Virus record (IMG/VR): IMGVR_UViG_3300031787_007614
Span: 300,405 to 364,404 of that record
Strand: one strand, 5' to 3'
DNA length: 64,000 bases
The notes beneath the pieces were generated by a model that saw nothing but the letters and a program-made list of their open reading frames with translations, did no database searches and was not told the DNA's origin. Shown piece by piece: positions 15,327-62,774 of the stretch (position 1 is the stretch's first letter; every line of letters starts with the position of its first letter). Position numbers and translations under genes: made by a program.

Positions 15327-16408
15327 AACGAGTGGTACTGGCTGTCGCTGACCCTTGGAACTATTTTAATCAATGGCCAGGATACAGCTTGTCCATTATC
15401 AATCCAGACGGCGATGCCAACCGCAAACAATATCTCTTAGACAATTTAGACTGGAGTTTGTTGGTCACATCTGATGGCGTACAACATCGTGATGGTGGTG
15501 ATTACGGCGACGAGAAAATGGTAATGTACACTTCAGGCACAACCGGAGATTCAAAGTTTTTTAGTTATTCCACCACTCAGGTACAGCATGTTGTTGATAA
15601 CATAATTGCCAGCTACGAATTAACAGCCAATGATCGATTTTTGAGCGTTATGCCACTGTGGCATGGCCACGGACATATCCTAAACTATGTTGTTGCAACC
15701 GCTGGCATGCAAGTACACCATGTTCGACCGCCTGACTTGAAAAAACAAATAGAATTCAGCCCAACCTGGGTGTCTGCAATTCCTGACATACTTAGAGTAA
15801 TGTCACGCACTCAAAAATTCCCCGACTTGCGATTTGCTAGATCAGCCAGTGTTGCATTGCCCAACCAAGTGTTTGATGATTTAAAAAGATCATTTAATAC
15901 CCCAATCATTGAATCGTTTGGCATGTCTGAAGCCTGTAGCCATTGCTTTACCAATCCGTTGTATGGTGAACAACGTATAGGAACCATTGGACTTCCTGAC
16001 GGGATTGACGCAGACATACGCAACGGTAGCTTATGGCTGCGCGGCCCACAATGTCACACATCAGATTGGTTTGATACTGAAGACTTGGCTGAGCAAGACT
16101 CTGCAGGATACTACAAAATACTAGGACGTAGATCAGATCGACTGACCTTGCATGGCATCAAACTAAATCCATTGAGCATAGAAAATCAACTGTACAATCA
16201 CATACCACAACTGGATGAAGTTGTGGTGTTTGGCGAAAACAAAATGATGTGTGTGTACACCGGCAATGTTTTGCCCAATCAAGTGCGACAAGCATTAACT
16301 GATATTTCCACACACTGTAACCCCAAGTTCCTTAAACAAGTTGAAAGCATACCTAAAAATACCGCAGGCAAAGTATCACGTTCACTGCTAAAGGAAATTT
16401 ACAATTGA
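15323..16408 (+). CDS. AMP-binding (acyl-CoA/acyl-AMP ligase) family enzyme
   Basis: YTSGTTGDSK P-loop, FGMSE, GRRSD, IPKNTAGKVSR. Confidence 0.85.
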   Translation: MKRVVLAVADPWNYFNQWPGYSLSIINPDGDANRKQYLLDNLDWSLLVTSDGVQHRDGGDYGDEKMVMYTSGTTGDSKFFSYSTTQVQHVVDNIIASYELTANDRFLSVMPLWHGHGHILNYVVATAGMQVHHVRPPDLKKQIEFSPTWVSAIPDILRVMSRTQKFPDLRFARSASVALPNQVFDDLKRSFNTPIIESFGMSEACSHCFTNPLYGEQRIGTIGLPDGIDADIRNGSLWLRGPQCHTSDWFDTEDLAEQDSAGYYKILGRRSDRLTLHGIKLNPLSIENQLYNHIPQLDEVVVFGENKMMCVYTGNVLPNQVRQALTDISTHCNPKFLKQVESIPKNTAGKVSRSLLKEIYN

Positions 16409-49928: not shown

Positions 49929-50711
49929 ATGAAAATCTCTCGCTCCTTGATCGACCCAGTGGCACTCAGTTCCGTTGGCATGTTATTTCCAATTTGGACA
50001 GTGATCTGGTTGACAATAAACTGGTCATGGACTACATTTTTTGTTGTGCTATTGACCAGTTGGTTTATGGGAATTCACATCACTATGTTTGCGCATCGCG
50101 CCTGGTGTCATCGCGCCTGGAAACCTAGTTCAGTAGTTGATTTGTATGGACTTGTTGTATTTACCTTGTGCCTAGTAGGCAACAGCATTGGATGGGTGGG
50201 AATTCATCGCGAACATCATGCACATTGTGACACTGACCGTGATCCACATTCTCCATATCATAAGAGTCGGTGGGCTATTCAATTTTTGAGCTATTTCAAT
50301 CAAGTCAAAACCAAATACATTGTGGACCTTGGTAGAGATTCTCGCCATCTTTGGTTTTATCATTGGTACTGGGCCCTCAACATAGTTTGGTTTGCATTGT
50401 TATTTGCAATTGATCCTGCCCTGGTAGGATTATGGATAGCAGTAATTGGACTCACAGTGTTCAAACTTCACACAATCAATTCATTGTGTCATCGCACACC
50501 TTGGTTCTTGCTACCTATACACAATGATGACACCAGCAGTAACAGTGTGCTGATGGTGTTATTAAACATCAACAATGGCGAAGCTTGGCACAAGAACCAT
50601 CATCAAAATGCAGCCAACTATAGATTCAGTCAACGCTGGTATGAAATTGACCCACCTGCCAGAATAATTGAACTACTGGCGCAATTCAAGCTGGCCAGTA
50701 TCAATCGCTGA
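49929..50711 (+). CDS. Membrane fatty-acid desaturase
   Basis: HRAWCH, HREHH, HKNHH; DPHSP. Confidence 0.9.
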   Translation: MKISRSLIDPVALSSVGMLFPIWTVIWLTINWSWTTFFVVLLTSWFMGIHITMFAHRAWCHRAWKPSSVVDLYGLVVFTLCLVGNSIGWVGIHREHHAHCDTDRDPHSPYHKSRWAIQFLSYFNQVKTKYIVDLGRDSRHLWFYHWYWALNIVWFALLFAIDPALVGLWIAVIGLTVFKLHTINSLCHRTPWFLLPIHNDDTSSNSVLMVLLNINNGEAWHKNHHQNAANYRFSQRWYEIDPPARIIELLAQFKLASINR

Positions 50712-51584
50712 CCCATCAAATGGGCTAACATAGCCCATGGCTCTCCACAACAGACGGTTTTCAATATTTTCAAATGCAGGACGAGCATGCATGCTCAACC
50801 ACTGGCAATTGATAATTATTTCATAGTCTTGCCAATGATGAGCGTACTGGTACTTGGGCTGAGTTAGAAATTTGTACAGATAACTGAACCATGCTTGTTG
50901 TCCAGCGTTTGGAACTGGTGTTTTGCCAATATAGAATATTGGATTTTGCATGGGTGACCAATGGATGCCCGTGGCCCCTGATTTGTTTTGAGTAACAAAT
51001 TTGTTAAATCCTGTTCTGCCTTGATAGTTAACGTCTGCAGCCATAGGCCCGTTATCTGTACTGCCTGAGTAATTGTAATAACACATGAGCTGATCCAGAC
51101 TTCTTAATAGTCCAACTGGTGTATCGGTTGCTTGCCTAAGATCGTTTAATGCTTGTATGCTGTTGGTAAATCCTGTGATGCTGCCTTCAGTATGTTCTAC
51201 CCCGTACAAACACAAAGCATCGGGACGTTCTGCGGCAGTTCTTCCTGGTTCGTTGCAGTGCCAAGGCAAATCATCTGGCATGCCAAATAATCCAGTGATT
51301 TCACCGTGGACATCTTTCTTACCAGTGACTCTGATAATTTCTTTGTTGGTTTGTTCGACAAATATTTTTTCTTTGGCTGGAAGATCGTTATTGAGATCAT
51401 CAAACACACCAGAAGTAAATTGATGATATTGATCAATGGTTAACGGTTGCGTGTTATGGATTACAACCAGCAAGTTGGTATAAGGTAGCGTTCTTAATTG
51501 ATCGCGTTCGGTGCTGTTTACATCTAGCACGTTTAGTTGATCTACATGCACTACCCAGCCGTTTGGATCTAAAGTTAATTTCAT
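50673..51584 (-). CDS. TauD/TfdA-family dioxygenase
   Basis: GWVVHV, WHCN, T.F.N...A, Y.HHWQDY.....NQW.SMHAR. Confidence 0.75.
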   Translation of the reverse strand: MKLTLDPNGWVVHVDQLNVLDVNSTERDQLRTLPYTNLLVVIHNTQPLTIDQYHQFTSGVFDDLNNDLPAKEKIFVEQTNKEIIRVTGKKDVHGEITGLFGMPDDLPWHCNEPGRTAAERPDALCLYGVEHTEGSITGFTNSIQALNDLRQATDTPVGLLRSLDQLMCYYNYSGSTDNGPMAADVNYQGRTGFNKFVTQNKSGATGIHWSPMQNPIFYIGKTPVPNAGQQAWFSYLYKFLTQPKYQYAHHWQDYEIIINCQWLSMHARPAFENIENRLLWRAMGYVSPFDGSAIDTGQLELRQ

Positions 51585-51703: not shown

Positions 51704-52324
51704 TTAATCTACATGATGCTCAGTTTTGAAATTGCCGTTTTGCAAGCCAATCCGTCCACCTTCTGCTTCAATGCGTTTGTACACATCTTCCAACAAGATA
51801 GGCGCAAAATCAGTCTGCTCCACACATACGCAATGATACCGCACATCCAGTTCTGTGCCATACAAGATCTCTCCTGTACGGGCATCAACACCACGAGCTT
51901 TCTTAACTCGAGTGGCGTGCAAGTGTCCGTGGATGTTTACACCAAAGCGACCCAAGCTAGATTCATGCACAGGAATGTGACTCAAGATCATTCCGTTCAA
52001 CACATGATATGCTCGCAATTCACGAAAGTACCTGCGGTACTCATCATCACGGAAGATATCATGGTTGCCGCGGATCAATACCTTGTCGCCGTTCAAGCGA
52101 TGTAACGTAGGCAATGCCTTGCGGTTAATAACCACGTCACCCAAATGGTAGACCTTGTCTGATGGACGAACACGGTCGTTCCAACGGCGGATCATTTCCT
52201 CATCCATCTCTGCAGGATCATCCCACGGACGCAATTTCACAGTGTCATCATCTGGGTGTGTAAACTTGCACACGCCAACATGACCAAAATGCGTGTCGCT
52301 TACCAAAAATGTTGCTGGCATCAT
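51704..52324 (-). CDS. Calcineurin-like metallophosphoesterase
   Basis: DTHFGH, LGDV, GNHD, SHIP, HGHLH; AGGAGG SD. Confidence 0.9.
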   Translation of the reverse strand: MMPATFLVSDTHFGHVGVCKFTHPDDDTVKLRPWDDPAEMDEEMIRRWNDRVRPSDKVYHLGDVVINRKALPTLHRLNGDKVLIRGNHDIFRDDEYRRYFRELRAYHVLNGMILSHIPVHESSLGRFGVNIHGHLHATRVKKARGVDARTGEILYGTELDVRYHCVCVEQTDFAPILLEDVYKRIEAEGGRIGLQNGNFKTEHHVD

Positions 52325-52624: not shown

Positions 52625-53494
52625 TCACACTAAAGTATTAGAAATGTTGCAGTGATCAAAGTTAAGAGCAATGCGATGCACCACTCGATTCTGAATGTTT
52701 TCACAGCGCCATCTTTTGTGAATACTTAACCATTGTTCACTTAACACAATGTCACCGTCTTGCCAATCGTGGTGATATGTGTATTTTTCTTGCTCCACAT
52801 GTTGTCGTAATTTTTGAATTAGGGCATCGCTTTTGTCTTTGTCAAAACCCAGTATCTGATGAATTTGTAAAAACGAAAAAAACATGCCTGTGACACCAGC
52901 CTGGTTGGTGTGTAACAAACTTGGATACCAATTGTGGTTGATGGCATTTGAATCTCGACTGGTGATTGTGTAAGTGTCTTCAGAGATCACCCTAGCATCA
53001 AACCCCATGACCAGTTTTAAATCTTTGATTTGTTCTTTGAGTTCTTGGTCAAGATCTTGATAACTCAAAATGTTGTTGATCCAACTGGTTCGGCTGCCAA
53101 CAGAATCTTTTACTGAATACAACCAAATCAACGGATCTCGGTCTTCACTACCGGTTCTATTGCAGTGCCAATCTAGATCACTCACATGTTCAAACACACC
53201 TGGTTGTCCATGATGGTGACCACCGCCACCTACTCTGACAATTTTACCACGCCCGCCTTGTACTAATTTTGTGCCCGGTGTTGGCGTATTAGCCGGCGCC
53301 ACTTGCTCACATGCACCAATTTTTTCACAGATGTCAACTTCGTCTCCGGGCAAAAGGTGTTGATCGCGTATCACAACCACGGTGTCTTTGGCAGCAAGCC
53401 AAGCAATGGTATTCATCTCTTGCTGTGAAGCAGAACGTAAATCAATATCAGTAATGATTGAAGTCCAACCATTTTCGTGTAGTTGTATTTTCAT
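52625..53494 (-). CDS. TauD/TfdA-family dioxygenase
   Basis: VVIRDQHL, WHCN, Y.HDWQDGDIVL.EQW.SIHKR, RVVHRI. Confidence 0.8.
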   Translation of the reverse strand: MKIQLHENGWTSIITDIDLRSASQQEMNTIAWLAAKDTVVVIRDQHLLPGDEVDICEKIGACEQVAPANTPTPGTKLVQGGRGKIVRVGGGGHHHGQPGVFEHVSDLDWHCNRTGSEDRDPLIWLYSVKDSVGSRTSWINNILSYQDLDQELKEQIKDLKLVMGFDARVISEDTYTITSRDSNAINHNWYPSLLHTNQAGVTGMFFSFLQIHQILGFDKDKSDALIQKLRQHVEQEKYTYHHDWQDGDIVLSEQWLSIHKRWRCENIQNRVVHRIALNFDHCNISNTLV

Positions 53495-53916
53495 GTGTCT
53501 AATTGCACTTCTTGCCAGGTCGAGTCGCCGAGCATTTTAACTGCCATCACGTAGGTGTGCTGTTCTCCAGGGCCAGCGCACCAGTGATGCGGATGATTCA
53601 TACTCAACCAATGCTCGTTTTTTATTGAGTTAAAATACACATAGTAAGTTTTACCATGTCGAGGTTGTAAGCCGTACTTGACGCCGTGCATGATCTCACT
53701 AACATGCAGGCGTTGTTGAAGTGCGTCGGCCTGTTGTTTTAACACTTCAACTTGTTGCATGATCCTGTCATATTCTTGTTGAGCATGCATTCGCCCTACA
53801 TTGAGTATGACATCTTTTTCTCGTTCAACAGGAACAGGGGCAAACGCAGGACTGCCCAACTCCATTGGGTAAGGCAGACTGTTTCTTCTATCTCCGTCTT
53901 CTTTAGATAGATCCAT
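53491..53916 (-). CDS. Hypothetical protein (DUF2452-like)
   Basis: LPYP..LGSPAF, coiled coil, P.HGKTYYVY. Confidence 0.5.
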   Translation of the reverse strand: MDLSKEDGDRRNSLPYPMELGSPAFAPVPVEREKDVILNVGRMHAQQEYDRIMQQVEVLKQQADALQQRLHVSEIMHGVKYGLQPRHGKTYYVYFNSIKNEHWLSMNHPHHWCAGPGEQHTYVMAVKMLGDSTWQEVQLDT

Positions 53917-54172
53917 TGGTTCTACGTCTACGTCGGGGTTCTAAATCTTGTTCGCGATAGAGATAGTCTCTTGTGATTTTGCCTTGTTCAATTTCTTCAA
54001 GTACTGCCACTGAGTTGCTGTTTTTACTTGCAACTTTTCGCATGTCGCCGCGATTGAGTTCGCGCAATCGTCGAGAAGCCACTAGCACCAAGTCATAGCG
54101 ATTGCCAATTGCGGCTACTGCGGCTTCGCTGGTCAACCCGGCTGTTCTGTCGTTACTGTGAATAATTTTCAT
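53903..54172 (-). CDS. rpoZ: RNA polymerase omega-subunit-like protein
   Basis: SEAAVAAIGNRYDLVLVASRRLREL...AVLEEIEQGKI matches the omega pattern NR(F/Y)xLVxxAxxRAxQL...ALxEIxxG. Confidence 0.75.
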   Translation of the reverse strand: MKIIHSNDRTAGLTSEAAVAAIGNRYDLVLVASRRLRELNRGDMRKVASKNSNSVAVLEEIEQGKITRDYLYREQDLEPRRRRRTNGSI

Positions 54173-54458
54173 TGTTGTTTCCGTTTGAGTGATGGTGGTT
54201 GAGGGAATCTAAATCTTGAAATAGTTTTTTCTCTTGGGCTGTAAGTTTGTCTTTATGTGTCTTACGTGGATTGCCACACAAGTAACATGCAGGATTGCCG
54301 CAGTCCATGGCATGATGTTTGGCCAGGCGATGTGTTTGCCTAATGCTTCGTAAGTTGTAGGTGCTATGACTTTTGGCAATTTTGACTTGTCTAGCAATTG
54401 CAACATCTGTTTTATGACGGCGAGCTGAGTTTTTGAATTTAGCAAAGTCGTTAGCCAT
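54153..54458 (-). CDS. Hypothetical basic protein with CxxxxCxxC motif
   Basis: CGNPACYLCGNPR. Confidence 0.6.
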   Translation of the reverse strand: MANDFAKFKNSARRHKTDVAIARQVKIAKSHSTYNLRSIRQTHRLAKHHAMDCGNPACYLCGNPRKTHKDKLTAQEKKLFQDLDSLNHHHSNGNNNENYSQ

Positions 54459-54631
54459 CAGCCACCTCTTCCGCTGGCTTTTCTAACAGGTGCTCCTTTG
54501 ATCATTGGTGCGCCGTAGTTTTGTTTGGTCTTGGTAGTTTTGGTTTTTACTGTGGGTCGAGCAGCCTCATGCTTTTTGGCAAGAGCCTCTCGCACAGCGT
54601 CAGTGAGTTTGGAAGATTTTGGATCGTTCAT
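54458..54631 (-). CDS. 57-aa basic hypothetical protein
   Basis: Start MNDPKS, 5 nt after TAAATA. Confidence 0.55.
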   Translation of the reverse strand: MNDPKSSKLTDAVREALAKKHEAARPTVKTKTTKTKQNYGAPMIKGAPVRKASGRGG

Positions 54632-54655
54632 ATAACTATTTAACAATGTAGAACC

Positions 54656-54684
54656 AGTATAACACAGTTCTACATTGTTGTCAA
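54656..54684 (-). promoter_or_regulatory. sigma70 promoter TTGACA-17-TATACT
   Basis: Read directly. Confidence 0.8.
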
Positions 54685-54685
54685 G

Positions 54686-54814
54686 TTACATTGCCTGGAA
54701 TTCTTCCTTACCGCAACCACACTCTGGACAGTTATAGTATTTTGGCAAATCGTCAAATTTACCATCTGTCTCTTCATTGTGGACATGGCCACATACAGTG
54801 CATACGTATTCCAT
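54686..54814 (-). CDS. Rubredoxin (42 aa)
   Basis: MEYVCTVCGHVHNE...FDDLP..YNCPECG.GKEEF; GGAG SD. Confidence 0.9.
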   Translation of the reverse strand: MEYVCTVCGHVHNEETDGKFDDLPKYYNCPECGCGKEEFQAM

Positions 54815-54824
54815 TTCCGTCTCC

Positions 54825-55262
54825 TTATTGTGCTTCTTTGTGAGCAGCCAGGGCTTTGGTGAAACGATTGGCATGTGAGCGTTCGGCTTTGGCCAGTGTT
54901 TCAAACCAGTCAGCAATCTCGTCTAAGCCTTCGTCTCTGGCAGTTTTGGCCATGCCAGGATACATGTCAGTGTATTCATGTGTTTCGCCATGAATAGCAC
55001 TTTCCAGAGCCTGCTCAACAGATTTGGCACTCATGCCAGTGGCGGGATCTCCAGCACCACCTTCGATCAAGTATTCCATATGACCGTGTGCATGTCCAGT
55101 TTCGCCTTCGGCAGTTGAACGGAACAAGGCAGCAACGTCATTGTCGCCTGCTACGTCGGCCATGTTTGCGAAATACAAGTATCGACGATTGGCTTGCGAT
55201 TCTCCGGCAAATGCCGCCTTCAAGTTTTCTTCGGTACGGGTACCTTTTACAGATTGTGTCAT
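54825..55262 (-). CDS. Rubrerythrin (four-helix diiron domain)
   Basis: [35 protein letters not shown]; GGAGG SD. Confidence 0.92.
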
Positions 55263-55364: not shown

Positions 55365-55439
55365 TGGCCGGCCCTGAGAGGATCGAACTCCCACCGCTTG
55401 TTTCGAAGACAAGCATGATATCCATTTCACCAAGGGCCG
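55365..55439 (-). tRNA. tRNA-Arg(UCG)
   Basis: Cloverleaf; CTTGT-CT TCG AA-ACAAG; CCA end. Confidence 0.9.
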
Positions 55440-55444
55440 AGAAT

Positions 55445-55518
55445 TGGTGCTCCCAACTGGTAACGATCCAGTGTTTCTACATTACCAATGTAGTGTAATG
55501 CCTTTATACTATGAGAGC
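55445..55518 (-). tRNA. tRNA-Thr(GGU), non-canonical T-loop AUCGUUA
   Basis: CTACA-TT GGT AA-TGTAG; CCA end. Confidence 0.85.
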
Positions 55519-55522
55519 TAAG

Positions 55523-55596
55523 TGGAGCAGGATACCAGAATCGAACTGGTGACTGGACCTTGGCAAGGTTCTATTTTACCCCTAAACTAATCCTGC
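55523..55596 (-). tRNA. tRNA-Gly(GCC)
   Basis: GAACC-TT GCC AA-GGTCC; U73, CCA. Confidence 0.9.
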
Positions 55597-55609
55597 ATTC
55601 CGTTACTTA

Positions 55610-56086
55610 TTAGGCAGCTCGTAAACTCTTAAATCTATCTGCCGCGTATGATGCTGCAAATGCTTCTGGCTTCACAAACGGAATCACATTGCATGTTCCT
55701 TTGATGTAGCCCACAGCTTGCGAGATCACACAACTTGAACCGTATTGTTCGTCTGGGTTGATGTCCAAGTGAACTTCAACTTGACGGCCTTCTAGTACGT
55801 CAGCCAGTTTCAAATACAGTTCTGAAACCTTGTACACTTCGGTCATCAAACGCATGGCAGGTTTGCCTGGTTTCACGTCCCACACACGCTCGCGTTGAAC
55901 TTCGCCAAACAGTTTGCAGCCGTTGTTGCCGTTGATGTGTACCACAATGGCCAACACATAGTCGGCATACCAGGTACCGTCAATTTTGATTCGTTCAGAG
56001 TCGCAGCCAAGGTAGATGCGAGTTTCGGGCGTTTGTTTCTGGATAAATTCTGCTACTGATGCTATATCGAGCTTTTTCATTTTCAA
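55610..56086 (-). CDS. RNase H-like YkuK/DUF458 family protein
   Basis: IYLGCDS, RL..EV..., EVHLDIN, KPEAFAASYAAD. Confidence 0.8.
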   Translation of the reverse strand: MKMKKLDIASVAEFIQKQTPETRIYLGCDSERIKIDGTWYADYVLAIVVHINGNNGCKLFGEVQRERVWDVKPGKPAMRLMTEVYKVSELYLKLADVLEGRQVEVHLDINPDEQYGSSCVISQAVGYIKGTCNVIPFVKPEAFAASYAADRFKSLRAA

Positions 56087-56109
56087 CTTTCAAAAATATT
56101 TATTGATAG

Positions 56110-56186
56110 TGGTACCCCAGGAGGGATTCGAACCCTCAGAATTCTCCTTTTGAGAGAGACACGTATTCCAGTTCCGTCACCGGGGC
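56110..56186 (-). tRNA. tRNA-Leu(CAA), short variable loop
   Basis: TCTCT-CT CAA AA-GGAGA; 5-nt V region; A73, CCA. Confidence 0.88.
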
Positions 56187-56192
56187 ATTTGC

Positions 56193-56227
56193 AAAAAAAA
56201 AAACAGTAGGACTGGCCTACTGTTTTT
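56193..56227. terminator. Bidirectional intrinsic terminator
   Basis: A11-CAGTAGG-actgg-CCTACTG-T5. Confidence 0.8.
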
Positions 56228-56257
56228 ATAACTTGTGTCAGACAATCTGATCATGCG

Positions 56258-56557
56258 TTATTCTGTATAATCTTCTACAGTAAATGACACAGGAACAACA
56301 CTAAAAGTTGAAAGTTGTGCAGTCATCCATTCAACAAAGTCTTCTGCATTTTTTTTGTTTTCCCATTTTCGAGTTACAGTTAAATGGGTGGGACCTAGTT
56401 CTGACGGGTCGAGACCTGCGGTACCAACCACAGTAAAGTCATCATGCCCACCGTCTCCAACAATTTGTAAATAATTACTCCAAGGGATAATAGTTCTTGC
56501 TGTTTCTCGATCTTCTACAGACGCATACACCAACACAGTTTTAGCAACTATAGCCAT
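56258..56557 (-). CDS. Hypothetical protein (start MAIVAK)
   Basis: AAGGAG SD and upstream TAAATA. Confidence 0.65.
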   Translation of the reverse strand: MAIVAKTVLVYASVEDRETARTIIPWSNYLQIVGDGGHDDFTVVGTAGLDPSELGPTHLTVTRKWENKKNAEDFVEWMTAQLSTFSVVPVSFTVEDYTE

Positions 56558-56576
56558 AATAATCTCCTTTTTGTAT

Positions 56577-57350
56577 TTATTGCTTTGCGGCAATCACGCT
56601 TAAATGCCAACCTAGCTGTTGATTGACAGCCTGGCGTTGTGCATCGCTCATGGCAGCAAACCATGGTTCCAACACATAATTTCCTTGTTTGTACTGCTCT
56701 ACATTGTACATAAAACAGTAATCTTGCTTGATGCTTTTGATATCAAAGTGTACGTCCAGCAGTTTTTGTATTTCTCCTTGACTGTAAACTCTGGCATATG
56801 GGCAGTTGTCTTGCGCTTCAAACTGGTCCAGCCCAGACTGAATCATTGCCCATTTCCAACTGTTGCGAGCATACACTAGGAAACGAAACTCCCCATCAGA
56901 TGCTAGACTTGCGTAAGCATTGCTGACCACTTGTTCTACATTGGGATAGTGATGCAATACACCACAAGCATACACCATATCAAATTGTCCTAGCCCTGCA
57001 ACACGCTGACTGTCGCCTGCGTCCATGTGATAGAATTCAGCATCTAATCCCATAACAGTAAATCTCTGCTCACAAAGTTCTATGCTACGACTGCTAAGAT
57101 CAATCCCAACGTATTCAGCACCATGCCGTACAAATTGTTCAGCATCAGATCCAATGCCGCATCCTAGTTCTAGCACCCGCCGTCCCTTGCAGTTTTCAAA
57201 GTCGGCCAACTGCCACAAATGCGGCCCAACAAACCATCTACGACGATTGATGTTGTTCCAAAATTCTTCTGTGCCTTCTGGTGCCAACCCATGCTTTATA
57301 TTACAAGGTTGTTGATCCCAGTACTGTTCTATTTGAGTAATTGTAGCCAT
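56577..57350 (-). CDS. Class I SAM-dependent methyltransferase
   Basis: VLELGCGIGSD, GIDLS, FDMVYACGVLHH. Confidence 0.9.
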   Translation of the reverse strand: MATITQIEQYWDQQPCNIKHGLAPEGTEEFWNNINRRRWFVGPHLWQLADFENCKGRRVLELGCGIGSDAEQFVRHGAEYVGIDLSSRSIELCEQRFTVMGLDAEFYHMDAGDSQRVAGLGQFDMVYACGVLHHYPNVEQVVSNAYASLASDGEFRFLVYARNSWKWAMIQSGLDQFEAQDNCPYARVYSQGEIQKLLDVHFDIKSIKQDYCFMYNVEQYKQGNYVLEPWFAAMSDAQRQAVNQQLGWHLSVIAAKQ

Positions 57351-57388
57351 ACAGTGTATTTAAAAGTCTGTGCAAGCTACATTAAATT

Positions 57389-57465
57389 TGGTGCCCCAGA
57401 GGAGACTCGAACTCCTAAAATTTGGCTTCTAAGACCAACACGTATACCAATTCCGTCACCGGGGC
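57389..57465 (-). tRNA. tRNA-Leu(UAG), short variable loop
   Basis: TTGGT-CT TAG AA-GCCAA; 5-nt V region; CCA. Confidence 0.88.
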
Positions 57466-57476
57466 TTAAATACATC

Positions 57477-57680
57477 ATGCAAACCAAACAAGACTCCATC
57501 AAAAAAATAGAGCGTTTGCTTGCAATGGAAACATTGGGCAAAACGTTTGTGACCAAACAACAACAGTTGGCCTACGAGCGCGGATATCTAACAGGCTTGC
57601 TGGCTGCTATGGCCTACAACGACAATTCAGTCGAGCATGTGGTGAATCAACGCATCAAACATCTTACACCTAAAATCTAA
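57477..57680 (+). CDS. 67-aa hypothetical protein on the strand opposite the tRNAs
   Basis: MQTKQDSIKK...; TAAATA 4 nt upstream; fills a tRNA spacer. Confidence 0.6.
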   Translation: MQTKQDSIKKIERLLAMETLGKTFVTKQQQLAYERGYLTGLLAAMAYNDNSVEHVVNQRIKHLTPKI

Positions 57681-57681
57681 C

Positions 57682-57757
<76 letters not shown>

Positions 57758-57762
57758 ATGAA

Positions 57763-57837
57763 TGGTGGGTGATGAGAGGATCGAACTCCCGACAAACTGC
57801 GTGTAAGGCAGCGACTCTACCGCTGAGCTAATCACCC
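57763..57837 (-). tRNA. tRNA-Val(UAC)
   Basis: Canonical cloverleaf, CCA. Confidence 0.95.
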
Positions 57838-57842
57838 GTATA

Positions 57843-57933
57843 TGGTGGAAGTGGTGAGATTCGAACTCACGGACCCCTTTCGGAGCCGGCAGTTTTCAAG
57901 ACTGCTGCAATCAACCAACTCTGCCACACTTCC
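57843..57933 (-). tRNA. tRNA-Ser(UGA)
   Basis: Long V arm; GCAGT-CT TGA AA-ACTGC; CCA. Confidence 0.95.
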
Positions 57934-57949
57934 TAAAAAATTAAAAAAG

Positions 57950-58100
57950 ATACTGCTTTGCGTTTAAAGGTACTGAACATCCTTTCGGGTAGCTCACATC
58001 CTTCCTGGCACATGGTTCGACTGTGACTAGCAGTCTGGAACTTAATCCCAGCGGCACCTGGATAACGTTAAGGTCCCTAGCAGTTGGGCCCATAGTCAAT
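57950..58100 (-). ncRNA. Candidate structured spacer RNA
   Basis: Possible closing helix ACUGCU/AGCAGU, CC-GAAA-GG hairpin, CTAGCAGT repeated twice; no ORF called. Confidence 0.3.
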
Positions 58101-58127
58101 GAGTTTTTCACACATCTTTTCTAAACT

Positions 58128-58203
58128 TGGAGTAGGTGACAGGACTCGAACCTGCATTATACGGATTTGCAATCCGGCGCCTAGCCATTCGGCACACACC
58201 TAC
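58128..58203 (-). tRNA. tRNA-Cys(GCA)
   Basis: U73, CCA; TT GCA AA loop. Confidence 0.92.
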
Positions 58204-58209
58204 ATCTAT

Positions 58210-58286
58210 TGGTCGGAGTACGAGGGTTCGAACCTCGGACCTCCTGGTCCCAAACCAGGCGCACTACCAGGCTGTGCTATACTCCG
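58210..58286 (-). tRNA. tRNA-Pro(UGG)
   Basis: C1-G72; CCTGG-TT TGG GA-CCAGG. Confidence 0.95.
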
Positions 58287-58292
58287 TGTATT

Positions 58293-58511
58293 TTATTTTA
58301 CTTTGGGTTCTTGACTTTTGTCAAGTTCATGGGGTTCAGCAAATCTTGTGCCGTGGCCCAGATTCCAACTGTCTGCTGTGAAAATTTTTACAGGCTTCCA
58401 GTAACGACTTATGATGTTGTTGACAGCAACAGCCGCCGCCACAATCACTACAAATCCTATTGCTGTCAAAATACTACCAGCTAAGAATACAGCCGCTTGA
58501 TCCATGTCCAT
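58293..58511 (-). CDS. Small membrane protein
   Basis: One hydrophobic helix; fills the spacer between tRNA-Gly and tRNA-Pro. Confidence 0.6.
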   Translation of the reverse strand: MDMDQAAVFLAGSILTAIGFVVIVAAAVAVNNIISRYWKPVKIFTADSWNLGHGTRFAEPHELDKSQEPKVK

Positions 58512-58524
58512 TGTTTGTTCCTTG

Positions 58525-58598
58525 TGGAGCAGGGTAGGGGAATCGAACCCCTCGCTTTAGCTTGGAAGGCTAAGGTATTACCACTATACGAACCCTGC
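58525..58598 (-). tRNA. tRNA-Gly(UCC)
   Basis: TTAGC-CT TCC AA-GCTAA; CCA. Confidence 0.95.
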
Positions 58599-58610
58599 GT
58601 TAAAATACTT

Positions 58611-58639
58611 ATTATACAACACTCAGACACTGTTGTAAA
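58611..58639 (-). promoter_or_regulatory. Internal sigma70 promoter TTTACA-17-TATAAT
   Basis: Read directly; just upstream of tRNA-Gly(UCC). Confidence 0.65.
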
Positions 58640-58646
58640 GATCATT

Positions 58647-58721
58647 TGGTTGCCATGGACAGTTTCGAAATGTCGACCTATCGCTTATCAAGCGATTGCT
58701 CTTCCTCTGAGCTACACGGCA
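58647..58721 (-). tRNA. tRNA-Ile(GAU)
   Basis: ATCGC-TT GAT AA-GCGAT; CCA. Confidence 0.9.
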
Positions 58722-58727
58722 AAAACT

Positions 58728-58801
58728 TGGCACGGGTACTAGGGCTCGAACCTAGAATGACAGAGTCAAAGTCTGTAGTGTTACCATTACACTATACCCG
58801 A
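58728..58801 (-). tRNA. tRNA-Gln(UUG)
   Basis: ACAGA-CT TTG AC-TCTGT; G73; U1-U72 mismatch. Confidence 0.92.
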
Positions 58802-58813
58802 ACAAAAACTATT

Positions 58814-58888
58814 TGGTGGATGTAAGTAGAGTCGAACTACCACTTGACTCCGTATGAAGGAGGCGCACTACCATTATGCTATACATCC
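58814..58888 (-). tRNA. tRNA(CAU): elongator Met or Ile2
   Basis: G1-C72, A73, loop TT CAT AC; identity not resolvable by eye. Confidence 0.85.
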
Positions 58889-58892
58889 ATGT

Positions 58893-58984
58893 TGGTACCC
58901 CCACCGGGAGTCGAACCCAGATGAACCAATTATCTGTTGCTTACGGGATATAAATCCGCCGTTTTACCATTAAACTATAGGGGC
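58893..58984 (-). tRNA. tRNA-Ile(UAU)-like with 22-nt variable arm
   Basis: Loop TT TAT AT, A31-C39 mismatch, canonical T-arm, CCA; 92 nt. Confidence 0.7.
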
Positions 58985-58989
58985 ATGTC

Positions 58990-59064
58990 TGGGGTGTCGT
59001 ATGAGAATCGAACTCATGACAGCGGAATCACAACCCGCGGTTTTGCCACTAAACTAACGTCACC
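58990..59064 (-). tRNA. tRNA-His(GUG)
   Basis: G-1:C73 encoded; TT GTG AT loop. Confidence 0.92.
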
Positions 59065-59153
59065 ATATAGGAACACACTCAGGCGTAGTAGTTCGTTAGC
59101 CCACTAAGATACACGGCTACCACCCGTGTCATTAGTTGAATGTGTTTTTATAT
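59065..59153 (-). ncRNA. Closing-stem spacer element A
   Basis: 16-nt arms AUAUAAAAACACAUUC / GAGUGUGUUCCUAUAU filling the whole Lys-His spacer. Confidence 0.55.
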
Positions 59154-59227
59154 GGTAGGGGCGCCGGGATTCGAACCCGAAATTGGCAGATTAAAAGTCT
59201 GCTGTGATACCGTTTCACCACACCCCC
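59153..59227 (-). tRNA. tRNA-Lys(UUU)
   Basis: GCAGA-CT TTT AA-TCTGC; CCA. Confidence 0.95.
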
Positions 59228-59288
59228 GGTATCTTGTCACTCTTGTCACTATTCATGACAGACTCTCCTTTTTAAAATAAGTATTTGA

Positions 59289-60413
59289 ATGAACAAATAT
59301 TGTCCAAAACCATTTGTTAGTATTCATATGTATACTGATAAAGATCTCAATCCAACTGTTAGGCCTTGTTGCAATTACAAACCTATCAAGCAGTACGCAA
59401 CGATTAATGATTATTTGCAATCATCTGAACTAGCGTCTCTTCAGCAACATTTGCTTACAAAAGAATCATTGCCAGATGGATGCAAGGCATGCAAAGTAGA
59501 CGAAGATAATAACTTGCCTAGTATCCGAAACAAGTATATTAAAGTGTTTGAGCATGAAACCAAAACTAAAATTGTTGACTTGGAAATTTTCCCTGGCAAC
59601 GCATGTAATCTCAGTTGCTTGTCGTGCAATCCTTCTCATAGTACCAAATCAGGTCAGGAATATGCCAAACTTGGATGGATTAAACAATCAATAGTGATCA
59701 ATCACGAAGATCATGCACTTGAAGTTATTAAACAGTTGCCAGACCTTAAATCAATAGGTTTTATTGGCGGCGAATTTTTTGTAACCAAACACAATATTGA
59801 ATTGCTCGATGCGGTTATTGAAAAAAATCTTAAAACACGAATTATTACCAATGCCACTCAACTAACCAAAAAACATCTTGAGCGGTTACAAAAAATATCT
59901 GACCTTGATGTGATGGTTAGTGTAGACGGTACTGGGCCAACATTTGAATTTTTACGCTATCCGGCACAATGGTCAGTTGTGCAATCAAACATTGTTGCAC
60001 TACAACAGGCATTGCCCGGAGCAAAGATACATTTGTCGGCAGTGTTGCAATTTTTAAATTTGCAAAATATCATTGAACTGTTTGAATACGCCAATGTCCG
60101 TCGACTGCCATTTAATGTGATCCCTTTATCTTATCCTGTTTGGCTACAGTCAGAAGTGCTTACCACTCTCGAACGTCAGCAGTTGATTGCAGTTATACAA
60201 AAACAACTAACAGTTGCAAAACTTACCAAAACACAAAAACAGTTAATGACTGATACATGTAGTATGCTAGAAACAATACAGCACTCACCTGCTCAACGAG
60301 AACAGTTTGTGTCTCGAACAAGCCAGCTGATTCGACTGCGCAACATCACACAACACACAATCAACTCAGTGTTTGGTGTGCTAGAAAATTTAGCGCAAGA
60401 AGTTATACAATAG
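59289..60413 (+). CDS. Twitch/SPASM-domain radical SAM protein inserted in the tRNA array
   Basis: CNLSCLSC, GGEF, N-terminal PCC and CKAC; TAAGTA 5 nt upstream. Confidence 0.85.
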   Translation: MNKYCPKPFVSIHMYTDKDLNPTVRPCCNYKPIKQYATINDYLQSSELASLQQHLLTKESLPDGCKACKVDEDNNLPSIRNKYIKVFEHETKTKIVDLEIFPGNACNLSCLSCNPSHSTKSGQEYAKLGWIKQSIVINHEDHALEVIKQLPDLKSIGFIGGEFFVTKHNIELLDAVIEKNLKTRIITNATQLTKKHLERLQKISDLDVMVSVDGTGPTFEFLRYPAQWSVVQSNIVALQQALPGAKIHLSAVLQFLNLQNIIELFEYANVRRLPFNVIPLSYPVWLQSEVLTTLERQQLIAVIQKQLTVAKLTKTQKQLMTDTCSMLETIQHSPAQREQFVSRTSQLIRLRNITQHTINSVFGVLENLAQEVIQ

Positions 60414-60453
60414 CCAGGGACCTAACTCGTCAAGGGAGAGTATGGCTATGTGT

Positions 60454-60531
60454 TGGTACCACCTGAGAGATTCGAACTCCCCGCCCCTGCGTTCGTAGCA
60501 CAGTGCTCTAATCCAAATGAGCTAAGGTGGT
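60454..60531 (-). tRNA. tRNA-Arg(ACG)
   Basis: CTGTG-CT ACG AA-CGCAG; CCA. Confidence 0.92.
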
Positions 60532-60539
60532 GTATTGAA

Positions 60540-60739
60540 TTTGAGAGTAGTAGCATCACTGTTATTGCTACCATTGACCCGTGTAATAAAGCCGGCCGGG
60601 AGGGTGATACGTCACTTGGAATACTTAACACACAGATTGATTACTTAGTTGTGTACGGAATCACGCCGCCCGTGCTTTACACTAGGTTGACCTTCGAAGA
60701 ATCTTCCTAGCGTGTCTTTCTCTTGCTGACACTCTCAAA
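60540..60739 (-). ncRNA. Candidate ~200-nt multibranched RNA
   Basis: Perfect 9-bp terminal stem UUUGAGAGU/ACUCUCAAA enclosing at least six hairpins. Confidence 0.6.
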
Positions 60740-60742
60740 ACT

Positions 60743-60816
60743 TGGTGCCCCACGACAGAATCGAACTGCCATCACAGGATTACAAAACCAGTGTACTACC
60801 ATTGTACTAGTAGGGC
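60743..60816 (-). tRNA. tRNA-Thr(UGU)
   Basis: TT TGT AA loop; weak anticodon stem; CCA. Confidence 0.85.
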
Positions 60817-60822
60817 GAATTG

Positions 60823-60912
60823 TGGTGGAAGACTAGGGAGTCGAACCCTATGACCCTATTACTAGAATCTACAGATTAGCAATCTGCTGCATTACCGTCC
60901 TGCCCGTCTTCC
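60823..60912 (-). tRNA. tRNA-Ser(GCU)
   Basis: Long V arm; TT GCT AA; CCA. Confidence 0.93.
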
Positions 60913-60917
60913 TGACT

Positions 60918-60993
60918 TGGCTCCCCAGCGTGGGATCGAACCACGGACACCTTGATTAACAGTCAAGTGCAACTACCGCTGTGCTACTAGGGA
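60918..60993 (-). tRNA. tRNA-Asn(GUU)
   Basis: CTTGA-CT GTT AA-TCAAG; G73. Confidence 0.95.
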
Positions 60994-61033
60994 ATAATCT
61001 ACTTAGTAGGCACTCGAGCCTACTACAAAAATA

Positions 61034-61126
61034 TGGTGGAGCAACTTGGAGTCGAACCAAGAATGTTTACCACGAGGGGACGGATTTACAGTCCGCCGAT
61101 GCACACGCCATAGCATCAATTGCTCC
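61034..61126 (-). tRNA. tRNA-Tyr(GUA) with extended D-arm
   Basis: GCGGA-CT GTA AA-TCCGT; D stem GATGC/GCATC; 18-nt V region. Confidence 0.85.
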
Positions 61127-61131
61127 ATATT

Positions 61132-61206
61132 TGGTGGACCGGCGGGGGATCGAACCCCGACTAAAGGCTTGCAAAGCCCCTGTGCTCCCATTATCACTAC
61201 CAGCCC
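61132..61206 (-). tRNA. tRNA-Ala(UGC)
   Basis: G3-U70 identity pair; TT TGC AA. Confidence 0.93.
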
Positions 61207-61212
61207 AAATTT

Positions 61213-61286
61213 TGGCATCCCGGGAGGGACTCGAACCCCCACGAACGGTTTTGGAGACCGTCATGCTGCCATTACACCACCGAGAC
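61213..61286 (-). tRNA. tRNA-Trp(CCA)
   Basis: ACGGT-CT CCA AA-ACCGT; G73. Confidence 0.93.
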
Positions 61287-61294
61287 ATAATTTT

Positions 61295-61370
61295 AACACA
61301 CTCTTGCGAATGTGTGTATTAAAACATTCTAAACTACTTAGGCTGCCTGTTTGTAAAGAATGTTTTAATA
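61295..61370 (-). ncRNA. Closing-stem elements B and C (tandem)
   Basis: ACACAUUC-GCAA-GAGUGUGU hairpin, and a perfect 14-bp inverted repeat UAUUAAAACAUUCU/AGAAUGUUUUAAUA. Confidence 0.55.
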
Positions 61371-61468
61371 CGCTCGGATTTTTTTATGTACAAGAACATA
61401 AGCCATCCCCGAGGCCGCCCATTTGTAGTTTAGAGTGATACAGGCTCGCGTTGCCGTTGCACTAAATG

Positions 61469-61496
61469 AAAAAACCCAGGGTTTTTACGCCTGGGT
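61469..61496 (-). terminator. Attenuator terminator
   Basis: ACCCAGG-9nt-CCUGGGU followed by U5. Confidence 0.8.
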
Positions 61497-61524
61497 CCTT
61501 GGGTAAGATACGGTTGTATACTAC

Positions 61525-61632
61525 TTAGGACCCTCTGCCTCCTGGAATGCTATTCATGCGACCATAGGCGTGTGACCAAACTGGTGTCTGGGCAAACTTG
61601 GGTAGCAGTGAACAATATTGTGTTTTCATCAT
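61525..61632 (-). CDS. Putative 35-aa leader peptide (leaderless)
   Basis: MMKTQYCSLLPKFAQTPVWSHAYGRMNSIPGGRGS*; the stop codon overlaps the antiterminator 5' strand. Confidence 0.6.
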   Translation of the reverse strand: MMKTQYCSLLPKFAQTPVWSHAYGRMNSIPGGRGS

Positions 61633-61639
61633 AAGTCCT

Positions 61640-61668
61640 ATTGTACAGTATTTACCTTTTGAGGTCAA
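61640..61668 (-). promoter_or_regulatory. sigma70 promoter TTGACC-17-TACAAT (nested TAAATA in spacer)
   Basis: Read directly; the -10 lies 7 nt before the leader ATG. Confidence 0.85.
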
Positions 61669-61704
61669 CCACTGTGTTAAAGTTATTTAGCCTTTCGGCT
61701 GAAT

Positions 61705-61779
61705 TGGTTGCGGGGGAAGGAATCGAACCTCCGTCTCCCAGGTTATGAGCCTGGTGGTCTACCGCTGACGTACCCCGCG
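61705..61779 (-). tRNA. tRNA-fMet(CAU)
   Basis: C1-A72 mismatch; CT CAT AA; CCA. Confidence 0.9.
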
Positions 61780-61875: not shown

Positions 61876-62774
61876 TGGCGGACTGAGAATACATCCTAAC
61901 CCAGTAACACCTCGGACATTATTACAAACCTTGCGAGTCTGCTTTCTTCCGATTTCCACTGCAACCATATTGCTATGTATCACAGTCTGTTACCAGTATC
62001 GCCGTTTTTAAAGACAGGCAGTAGTCTTGTCATCACATGCTACTCTACACCATCTATCCCGTTGACCTTTAGAGCCATTCACTGTCGCTAAACAGTTACG
62101 AAACTTCCAGTATAAACAGATTTCACCTTGCGAGTTACGTCTGACTGTATTGCCTTGCGGCTACAGCATTAGATACTTTTCACACATGACCGAGTCAGTC
62201 TTTGCTTTTATGTTAGATAGTGGTTTTGAAGCCACAGCCTATTCCTTAACAGGGAATTGCTCTACGATGAGCTATATCAACCTACTGCGATGTGCTGACT
62301 CAGTTGCTTCATACTCTTTTGGAATACAAAATACAACACACCACGTTCCTTTTGTCTTGCGAACTACTCAGACGTCTTTTGCGATCAGTGTCGGGTCTCG
62401 GCTTTCGCGTACCTCCACCAACCACTCAAACTGCATACGAGCCCTTGGGTGCAACCCCTCGGACCGATACGCTACCCTTTCTCATACCAATTAACTGGGC
62501 TGGTTTTGTATAGAAGTCAGCACCACCTGTTACTTTTCTGCAACTCCGGTTACCCTTGCGGGCCGGTAAGTTACAGCTCTTTCCTATACTCCCAGCGTCA
62601 TTGTTACAACCACCGGTCTTATCAGTGATCGGATCCTCACGGACCTGAGCAGGCTTGTTTACATGAACCATTGCTGGCGGACTTATGTAGGCATACATCC
62701 TTTGGCTGGGTCACCCCAGTTATTCTTCGTACAGCTGGGCGAACCATACTGCACAGGACAATAAACTGCCCTAT
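61876..62774 (-). ncRNA. ~900-nt highly structured ncRNA, GOLLD-like candidate
   Basis: Own consensus promoter, many GCAA/GAAA tetraloop hairpins on the minus strand, long-range complementarities, no credible ORF, heads a phage tRNA array. Confidence 0.65.

What the first reader, a model, noticed from the sequence alone, without database searches (positions are those of the whole stretch)
53903..54172. Phage RNA polymerase omega homologue lacking the ppGpp-site N-terminus
The omega core is recognisable, but the MARVT N-terminus that forms ppGpp site 1 in proteobacterial RNAP is replaced by an extension ending AGLT. Inference: swapping it into host RNAP could blunt the stringent response and keep the sigma70-driven tRNA/ncRNA array active.
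Basis: partly seen in the sequence, partly recalled or inferred. Interest (0 to 1): 0.6.

Follow-up and report, generated by a model that had tools for sequence, protein, structure and literature searches.

The report
Jumbo-phage RNA polymerase omega subunit variant
A 364-kb freshwater phage that has no RNA polymerase of its own carries a true copy of the small omega subunit of bacterial RNA polymerase. In this copy the arginine that helps hold the starvation signal ppGpp is replaced by glycine behind an added N-terminal tail. The gene belongs to a large family of phage omegas that I could not find described anywhere.

Summary
Window 53903-54172 (-) encodes an 89-aa omega subunit: Pfam PF01192 and TIGR00690 score above their cut-offs, it is 41% identical to E. 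coli omega, and the predicted fold matches omega chains of solved RNAP structures.

The E. coli N-terminus MARVT aligns with T10-A-G-L-T14, so Arg3 is Gly and 9 extra residues precede the motif. Gly is invariant in 119/119 close homologues. The gene is under purifying selection (dN/dS about 0.2).

The window is the end of a complete 364-kb DTR myovirus. No beta, beta', sigma-70 or T7-type RNAP domain was detected in it.

Omega is widespread in this freshwater jumbo-phage lineage: at least 83 IMG/VR loci and 206 + 456 protein clusters. Most sister phages keep a canonical MAR(I/L)T start, so the Gly form looks derived.

Best reading: the protein replaces host omega on a proteobacterial-type host RNAP and probably weakens ppGpp site 1.

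- The array's candidate promoters have AT-rich discriminators.
- The host is unknown.

No paper on phage-encoded omega was found.

The parts
53903..54172 (-). Phage rpoZ: 89-aa omega-subunit homologue. Residues 1-9 are a variable N-terminal extension. Residues 10-15 (TAGLTS) are the counterpart of E. coli MARVTV, with Gly12 at the Arg3 position. Residues 16-72 are the conserved omega helical core. Residues 78-84 (EPRRRRR) are a conserved basic tail.
   Evidence: dN/dS about 0.2
54153..54458 (-). Upstream 101-aa basic protein ('up101', phrog_4499, motif HHAMDCGNPxCxLCGNPRK). It overlaps the omega start by 20 nt here and by 4 nt (ATGA) in relatives. It is a core gene of the whole phage lineage and is adjacent to omega only in this subgroup.
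54458..54646 (-). First small ORF of the operon (62 aa as listed; the true start is probably an internal ATG). Function unknown.
54656..54684 (-). Sigma-70-like promoter candidate, TTGACA-17-TATACT with an extended -10 TG (11/12). It lies in the gap just 5' of the operon.
   Evidence: This is a consensus match only; the total count in the region is not above shuffles.
53491..53916 (-). Downstream 141-aa DUF2452 protein, overlapping the omega stop by 14 nt (same operon).
52625..53494 (-). TauD/TfdA-family dioxygenase, last gene of the operon. The next promoter-like site is at 52624-52596.
51704..52324 (-). 206-aa calcineurin-like phosphoesterase (Metallophos). It is a recurrent near-neighbour of omega in nearly all viral omega groups, at 66-87% identity.

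Best explanation
The ORF is a phage-encoded omega subunit of bacterial-type RNA polymerase. The proposed mechanism has four steps.

(1) Expression. The gene is expressed as the third gene of a five-gene operon (up62, up101, omega, DUF2452, TauD) from a near-consensus sigma-70-type promoter. This is inferred, with weak support from metatranscriptome contigs.

(2) Binding. The protein binds the beta' subunit of the host's own RNA polymerase at the normal omega site, in place of or alongside host omega. This is inferred from three things: 41-46% identity to E. coli and Vibrio omega, retention of the GNR[YF]DLVL..RR.REL and EIExG core, and the absence of any detectable phage RNAP. I put this at about 0.75.

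(3) Effect on site 1. In this subgroup the residue equivalent to Arg3 is an invariant Gly, and the N-terminus no longer ends at Ala2. The omega half of ppGpp site 1 is therefore altered, and ppGpp binding there is probably weakened. This is inferred; about 0.5 given that the protein binds.

(4) Consequence. Following the current E. coli picture, the expected result is not loss of stringent promoter control, which is carried by site 2 with DksA. It is RNAP whose elongation is less slowed or paused by ppGpp in a starved freshwater host. That would help a phage that must transcribe 364 kb. This step is speculative.

Most sister phages carry a MAR-type omega, so the family-wide benefit of carrying omega must be something else. 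Candidates are supply of the beta'-folding and assembly factor, or a shift in sigma competition. The Gly variant is then a derived refinement.
For: Identity as omega. The AF2 model has pLDDT 77.5. All top Foldseek hits are omega chains of E. coli and V. cholerae RNAP, with rmsd 1.4-1.9 A over about 62 residues.

Phage origin and dependence on host RNAP: the record is a complete DTR virus. It has a T4-like myovirus tail sheath, baseplate and DNA polymerase, and is related to PA5oct, Atu_ph07 and Phosso. No Rpb2_6, Rpb1_2, Sigma70_r2, Sigma70_r4 or T7 RNAP domains were found. Group 2 jumbo phages are described as lacking their own RNAP (PMC7824862).

Functional constraint: Gly is 119/119 at the Arg3 position, and L/I, T and S are nearly invariant beside it. 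dN/dS has a median of 0.20.

Derived state: MAR-type phage omegas dominate the sister set (97 of 120 listed start at the Met1 position) and sit in phage contexts on 271-351-kb contigs. They branch nearest the E. coli root in the tree (weak support).

ppGpp contacts of omega residues 2-4, and loss of binding in omega-delta2-5.

Proteobacterial type: the Bacteroidota MAG that holds related phage contigs has an unrelated omega, and its beta' lacks the site-1 residues.

Promoter.

RNA-library contigs span the up101/omega junction (54067-54318, 0 differences) and the omega/DUF2452 junction.
Against: No binding, expression-timing or ppGpp data exist.

The host is unknown, so whether its beta' has a site-1 pocket is an inference.

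The 3'-phosphate contacts of omega 2-4 are made by main-chain atoms, so Gly plus an extension may still bind ppGpp.

Conservation of TAGLTS could mean that a ligand or partner is still bound there.

MAR-type omegas in sister phages show that ppGpp-blindness is not why phages carry omega.

Omega is dispensable in E. coli, and site-1 mutants grow normally under starvation, so any phenotype may be small.

RNA-library contigs can come from DNA carry-over.

Very divergent phage RNAPs could escape Pfam.
Confidence: 0.55

Rival explanations
1. Plain omega supply. The phage omega only provides the beta'-folding, assembly and stability function, or shifts sigma competition toward the primary sigma, during a long infection. 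The N-terminal change would then be neutral or irrelevant to ppGpp.
For: Most phage omegas of the lineage keep the canonical MAR start, so the common function cannot be loss of site 1. Omega's role in beta' assembly is established knowledge. Part of the ppGpp contact is main-chain.
Against: Gly at the Arg3 position is invariant in 119/119 sequences and the flanking LTS is nearly invariant. That argues the segment is functional and specifically changed, not drifting.
Confidence: 0.25
2. The altered N-terminus plus the basic tail create a new docking surface. The TAGLTS segment and the EPRRR tail would bind a phage factor (for example up101 or another early protein) or nucleic acid, retargeting host RNAP to phage templates.
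For: TAGLTS and the P-R-R-R tail are conserved: 110 of 120 close homologues carry the P-basic-basic-basic motif and 112 of 120 have three consecutive basic residues near the C-terminus. up101 and omega are translationally coupled in 44 loci.
Against: up101 is present in all lineage genomes tested, including the MAR-type ones, where it lies 4-140 kb from omega. The adjacency is therefore not a specific association. No partner has been identified.
Confidence: 0.12
3. The host is not a proteobacterium (for example a Saprospiraceae host, as the binned MAG might suggest). Site 1 would then not exist in the host, and the N-terminal difference would have no ppGpp meaning.
For: Two related phage contigs are binned in a Haliscomenobacter MAG. 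Group 2.2 jumbo phages include Bacteroidetes phages.
Against: The MAG's own omega is unrelated to the phage type, and 0 of 40 other genomes of its family match the phage profile. Its beta' lacks the site-1 residues, whereas sister phage omegas conserve the MAR motif, whose only known role is site 1. The phage omega is closest to gammaproteobacterial omegas. Binning is weak evidence for a host.
Confidence: 0.08

Closest known systems
Bacterial RNA polymerase omega subunit (RpoZ; E. coli and Vibrio cholerae type)
   Same: Same Pfam and TIGRFAM family. 41-46% identity, the same helical fold and the same conserved core motifs.
   Different: It is encoded by a phage, outside the gmk-rpoZ-spoT context. 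Arg3 is Gly, there is a 9-aa N-terminal extension, and a basic EPRRR tail replaces the acidic disordered C-terminus.
Engineered E. coli omega-delta2-5 (site 1-minus RNAP)
   Same: The omega residues that contact the ppGpp phosphates are changed. The expected effect is a weakened site 1.
   Different: The natural variant keeps A, L and T at positions 2, 4 and 5 and adds residues rather than deleting them. Its effect on ppGpp binding is untested.
MAR-type omegas of sister jumbo phages (for example L050/L051, P0121-P0160)
   Same: Same phage lineage and the same core. They share neighbouring genes such as the Metallophos and RNaseH-like proteins.
   Different: They start MAR(I/L)T with no extension, so they are predicted to be site-1 competent. 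In them up101 is not adjacent to omega.
Phage-encoded modifiers of host RNAP (T4 gp55/gp33/AsiA/Alt, T7 Gp2, Xp10 P7, phage sigma factors)
   Same: Same general strategy: a phage without its own RNAP reprogrammes the host enzyme.
   Different: Those are sigma-like factors, inhibitors or modifying enzymes. I could find no core-subunit substitute of this kind described.

Membership tests
RNA polymerase omega / Rpb6 (PF01192; TIGR00690 rpoZ) | Profile match above the curated cut-off | tested here: met
   PF01192 scores 41.4 bits against a cut-off of 26. TIGR00690 scores 34.4 against 23.6.
RNA polymerase omega / Rpb6 (PF01192; TIGR00690 rpoZ) | Omega helical fold | tested here: met
   The AF2 model has pLDDT 77.5. 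The top 40 Foldseek PDB hits are all omega chains, with TM 0.47-0.79 and rmsd 0.9-2.6 A. This rests on a predicted model only.
RNA polymerase omega / Rpb6 (PF01192; TIGR00690 rpoZ) | Conserved core motifs (GNR[FY]xLV..A.RRAR.. and EIExG) | tested here: met
   Alignments. G14, N15, R16, R26, R28, E53, I54, E55 and G57 (E. coli numbering) are invariant.
RNA polymerase omega / Rpb6 (PF01192; TIGR00690 rpoZ) | Stoichiometric binding to beta' in RNAP core | not testable with these tools
   The host is unknown.
ppGpp site-1-competent ('MAR-motif') omega of Proteobacteria | Met-Ala-Arg at the extreme N-terminus | tested here: not met
   The aligned residues are T10-A11-G12, preceded by 9 residues. 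Gly is found in 119/119 homologues. The motif definition comes from PMC6912228.
ppGpp site-1-competent ('MAR-motif') omega of Proteobacteria | Binds ppGpp together with beta' R362, R417, K615, I619 and D622 | not testable with these tools
   This needs reconstituted RNAP and a binding assay. The host beta' is unknown.
Group 2.2 jumbo myoviruses (Atu_ph07, PA5oct, Rak2-like) | T4-like structural and replication core, MoxR AAA+ gene, no own RNAP | tested here: met
   Tail sheath 43-44% identical to Phosso, PA5oct and Atu_ph07. Baseplate wedge, family-B DNA polymerase and RNR are present. A homologue of a gene that carries faint to weak AAA/AAA_3 (MoxR-type) hits in related phage loci lies at G000 346132-347217 (86-87% identical). 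No RNAP domains were found. Group criteria are from PMC7824862.

The most novel reading that the evidence does not exclude
Freshwater jumbo phages carry interchangeable 'flavours' of the RNAP omega subunit. The MAR type would be ppGpp-competent and the xAG type ppGpp-blind. The phage would use them to set how the hijacked host polymerase responds to the starvation alarmone. The Gly-type omega of this phage would make host RNAP elongation insensitive to ppGpp. That would be a new anti-alarmone strategy acting by core-subunit replacement rather than by degrading ppGpp.
Probability: 0.2. Interest if true: 0.8.

Novelty: new variant of a known kind. Interest (0 to 1): 0.62.

Why it matters
Omega is the least understood core subunit of bacterial RNAP. 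Its one clear regulatory role is forming ppGpp site 1. I could find no description of a phage-encoded core-subunit homologue for the host enzyme:
- PHROGs has no such family.
- Among 50,697 GenBank phage records, the only records with omega hits look like bacterial sequence, not true phages.
- Two jumbo-phage reviews do not mention it.

The gene is nevertheless common in abundant freshwater jumbo phages. It also shows natural variation exactly at the ppGpp-contacting residues: MAR, xAR with an extension, MxG, and xAG with an extension.

That gives a ready-made natural mutant series for asking what site 1 does in vivo, and how phages cope with starved, ppGpp-rich hosts. The series can be tested by simple reconstitution experiments.

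Tried and rejected
(1) Complex prediction on omega + up101 returned 'no answer' (score 0.00). This is no evidence either way.

(2) I suspected up101 was an omega-specific partner. The pair is adjacent and translationally coupled in 44 loci. I rejected this as a specific association because up101 is present in every lineage genome tested, including MAR-type ones, at 4-140 kb from omega.

(3) up101 has no Pfam, NCBIfam or PDB match. The Atlas gives only viral hypothetical clusters. The AF2 model was too poor (pLDDT 63.7) for a fold search.

(4) Phage-encoded ppGpp tools: no RelA/SpoT domain and no DksA/TraR zinc finger were found. There is only a sub-threshold MazG-like hit at G000 15566-15757.

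(5) A cryptic phage RNAP: no Pfam hits. A D[FY]DxD motif scan gave four hits (two in virion-structural proteins, two in unannotated ORFs), none in an RNAP-like context.

(6) Host identification: the genome search draws no relatives for a virus record. The only 'cellular' hit was a MAG that contains phage contigs. The taxonomy of handles is hidden. The host therefore remains unknown.

(7) I considered an alternative TTG start at Leu13. I rejected it because the upstream residues T-A-G are conserved as protein and the extension recurs in homologues.

(8) Literature searches for phage-encoded omega or rpoZ found nothing. The search tool does not match the Greek letter omega, so a paper that writes only the symbol could have been missed.

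(9) The large representative-protein search was not run, because family scans already identified the protein.

Full report
**The feature**

The ORF at window 53903-54172 (minus strand) runs ATG to TAA and encodes 89 aa. It matches Pfam RNA_pol_Rpb6 at 41.4 bits (cut-off 26) and NCBIfam TIGR00690 rpoZ at 34.4 bits (cut-off 23.6). No PHROG family matches it.

A profile of 20 family members (alignment A1) hits PDB omega chains. The Vibrio cholerae chain scores E 1.6e-16, E. coli 1e-14, and the Pseudomonas, Xanthomonas, Caulobacter, Francisella and Firmicute omegas score far weaker. BLASTP against E. coli RpoZ, taken from NC_000913, gives 41% identity over 63 residues.

An AlphaFold2 model has mean pLDDT 77.5. 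Residues 1-6 fall below 50. The helices are at 15-22, 25-41, 53-62 and 68-72. Its best Foldseek PDB hits are all omega chains of RNAP structures, with rmsd 1.4-1.9 A over about 62 residues and 44-46% identity to E. coli and V. cholerae. The omega assignment is secure.

**The N-terminus**

All alignments put phage A11-G12-L13-T14-S15 on E. coli A2-R3-V4-T5-V6. The motif is therefore retained in register but with Arg3 changed to Gly, and nine extra residues (MKIIHSNDR, then T10) precede it.

Among the 119 close homologues that could be anchored:
- The Arg3 position is Gly in 119 of 119.
- Position 4 is L or I, position 5 is T in 111, and position 6 is S in 116.
- The extension varies from 4 to 16 residues and is poorly conserved.

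Pairwise dN/dS across the gene has a median of 0.20, with dS near saturation. A conserved basic C-terminal tail (EPRRR) replaces E. coli's acidic tail.

The annotated ATG is the real start. The extension sequence recurs in homologues only about 65% identical overall. In relatives the omega ATG overlaps the upstream stop as ATGA.

**Genomic setting**

The window is the last 64 kb of a 364,404-bp IMG/VR virus record with direct terminal repeats. CheckV estimates it as 100% complete.

PHROG scans identify a tail sheath, a baseplate wedge, virion proteins, a T4-type DNA polymerase, RNR and an ATP-dependent protease. The tail sheath is 43-44% identical to those of Sinorhizobium phage Phosso, Pseudomonas phage PA5oct and Agrobacterium phage Atu_ph07. 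This places the phage in the group 2.2 jumbo myoviruses, which are described as lacking their own RNAP (PMC7824862).

Consistent with that, no Rpb2_6, Rpb1_2, Sigma70_r2, Sigma70_r4 or T7-type RNAP domain was found in the genome. No RelA/SpoT or DksA/TraR domain was found either. There is only a sub-threshold MazG-like hit.

Omega sits in a tightly packed minus-strand block: up62, up101, omega, DUF2452, TauD. A TTGACA-17-TATACT promoter-like site with an extended -10 TG lies in the gap immediately upstream, at 54684-54656. Another 11/12 site lies just after the block. These are consensus matches only.

Metatranscriptome contigs identical or nearly identical to the window span the up101/omega and omega/DUF2452 junctions. 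That is compatible with transcription, but DNA carry-over cannot be excluded.

The phage DNA is held in freshwater runs from 16 studies.

**A large, undescribed family of phage omegas**

The word-based protein search found 206 clusters at E<=1e-3, all 80-102 aa. The longest contigs reach 361 kb.

IMG/VR holds at least 83 loci, many on contigs of 100-350 kb.

A second search was seeded with the omega of L050, an IMG/VR record of 262 kb. It found 456 further clusters, none shared with the first list among the 120 shown for each. Three of these were inspected (contigs of 351, 281 and 271 kb). All lie in phage-like contexts without gmk or spoT.

Among the 120 listed from the second search, 97 begin at the same position as E. 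coli Met1, nearly all with MAR (MARIT in 80, MARLT in 12). A few start MDGIT or MNGLT, that is Gly with no extension.

Other IMG/VR groups read MSQS-RARYTS, with Arg kept and a 4-aa extension, or are more divergent.

These groups belong to one phage lineage. They share highly conserved neighbours, for example the 206-aa Metallophos protein at 66-87% identity. The complete genomes are of similar size, 338-349 kb.

A tree rooted on E. coli places the MAR-type nearest the root and the xAG group as a clade with SH-aLRT 92. With 85 columns and one long outgroup, this is weak. Taken together, the Gly-plus-extension form appears derived from a MAR-type phage omega.

**Partner hypothesis, tested and weakened**

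The 101-aa upstream protein up101 has invariant H43, C53, C58 and C61. It directly precedes omega in 44 loci. However, a profile of it also hits every lineage genome tested, including MAR-type genomes, at distances of 4 to 140 kb from omega. It is a lineage core gene, not an omega-type-specific partner.

The complex prediction for the pair gave no verdict.

**Host**

The host is unknown. All cultured relatives infect Proteobacteria. The phage omega is closest to gammaproteobacterial omegas among solved structures.

The one 'cellular' genome with a close homologue is a Haliscomenobacter MAG. Its two matching contigs (183 kb and 23 kb) are syntenic with this phage and are therefore binned phage DNA.

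Three further points argue against that MAG as the host:
- Its own omega is a typical 114-aa Bacteroidota form that the phage profile does not detect.
- 0 of 40 other genomes of its family match the phage profile.
- Its beta' lacks the site-1 residues: R362K, R417K, K615A, I619D, Q623E and Y626E.

Strict conservation of MAR in sister phage omegas argues that the lineage's hosts have a site-1 pocket, which points to Proteobacteria. This is an inference.

**What the N-terminal change should do**

In E. coli the ppGpp phosphates at site 1 are held by omega residues 2-5 and by beta' R417 and K615. RNAP with omega-delta2-5 binds ppGpp with Kd >100 uM (PMC7676912).

High-resolution structures show main-chain contacts from Ala2, Arg3 and Val4 (PMC10191844), and contacts of Ala2 and Arg3 to the 5'-diphosphate (PMC13192712).

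The MAR motif is used to predict site 1. It is conserved in alpha-, beta-, gamma- and deltaproteobacteria (PMC6912228).

Loss of the Arg side chain and of the free N-terminus at this spot is therefore likely to weaken ppGpp binding, but this is not certain.

Site 1 is dispensable for the stringent response in E. coli. Site 2 with DksA carries that response. Site 1 instead controls elongation, pausing and backtracking, and transcription-coupled repair. It also slows RNAP genome-wide at high ppGpp.

The near-consensus promoters just 5' of the tRNA blocks and of GOLLD have AT-rich discriminators: AAAATACA, AAGTATTT and AGATACAT. This is not the GC-rich type that ppGpp/DksA inhibits in E. coli.

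That is the weakest part of the interpretation. A more consistent prediction is ppGpp-insensitive elongation.

**Verdict**

This is a real phage-encoded omega subunit. It belongs to a large family in freshwater jumbo phages that I could not find described in the literature. The search tool does not match the Greek letter omega, so this negative is not airtight.

The N-terminal variant is a conserved, apparently derived state at exactly the ppGpp-contacting residues. Binding to host RNAP and loss of ppGpp binding are both untested inferences.

Noticed in passing
window 61880-62344 (-), with 55365-61779 (-): A full-length GOLLD RNA (Rfam RF02032, 204 bits) with an embedded tRNA-like element at 62211-62281 sits at the head of a 25-tRNA array on the same strand. 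Near-consensus sigma-70-like promoters lie just 5' of GOLLD (62809-62781) and of two tRNA blocks (58639-58611, 58324-58295). All have AT-rich discriminators.
   Followed up: partly
window 54153-54458 (-): up101 is a 101-aa basic protein with invariant H43/C53/C58/C61 (motif HHAMDCGNPxCxLCGNPRK) and a C-terminal HSNG. It is a conserved core gene of the whole jumbo-phage lineage (E 1e-41 to 1e-52 in five genomes). It has no Pfam or PDB relative, and its function is unknown.
   Followed up: yes
window 51704-52324 (-): A calcineurin-like phosphoesterase (Metallophos, 206 aa) recurs within a few kb of omega in almost all viral omega groups, at 66-87% identity. It is far better conserved than omega itself. 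Its substrate is unknown.
   Followed up: partly
L089/L113-L118 (NZ_JBBAKG010000090.1 and contig C1 of the same MAG): A public Haliscomenobacter MAG contains two jumbo-phage contigs (183 kb and 23 kb) syntenic with this phage. This is either a binning artefact or a host hint. The MAG's own omega and its beta' site-1 residues are unlike the phage or proteobacterial type.
   Followed up: yes
window 54825-55262 (-) and about 54686-54814 (-): A rubrerythrin ferritin-like domain and a separate small rubredoxin ORF lie just upstream of the omega operon (a split rubrerythrin). The rubrerythrin is 91-92% identical in several related phages (75-76% in one, with a distant 42% hit in another). It has the deepest metatranscriptome contig coverage in the stretch.
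   Followed up: no
window 52625-53494 (-) and 50673-51584 (-): There are two TauD/TfdA-family dioxygenase paralogues. The first is the last gene of the omega operon.
   Followed up: no
window 3-7733 (+) (G000 293435-308137): A single 4900-aa ORF follows the baseplate-wedge gene. Its C-terminal 2576 aa lie in the window. It was not annotated here.
   Followed up: no
window 58893-58984 (-) and 61034-61126 (-): Two unusually long tRNA calls: tRNA-Ile(tat) at 92 nt and tRNA-Tyr at 93 nt. The Ile(UAU) call may be a long-variable-arm tRNA, an intron-bearing tRNA, or a miscall.
   Followed up: no
L122 (JGI 3300071634 contig, 351 kb): A related MAR-type-omega phage carries outer-membrane and curli genes (Porin_4, OmpA, CsgF, CsgG, a curlin repeat, FecR) next to omega. 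Other relatives carry TctC, AhpC, AdoHcyase and TerC. This points to Gram-negative hosts.
   Followed up: no
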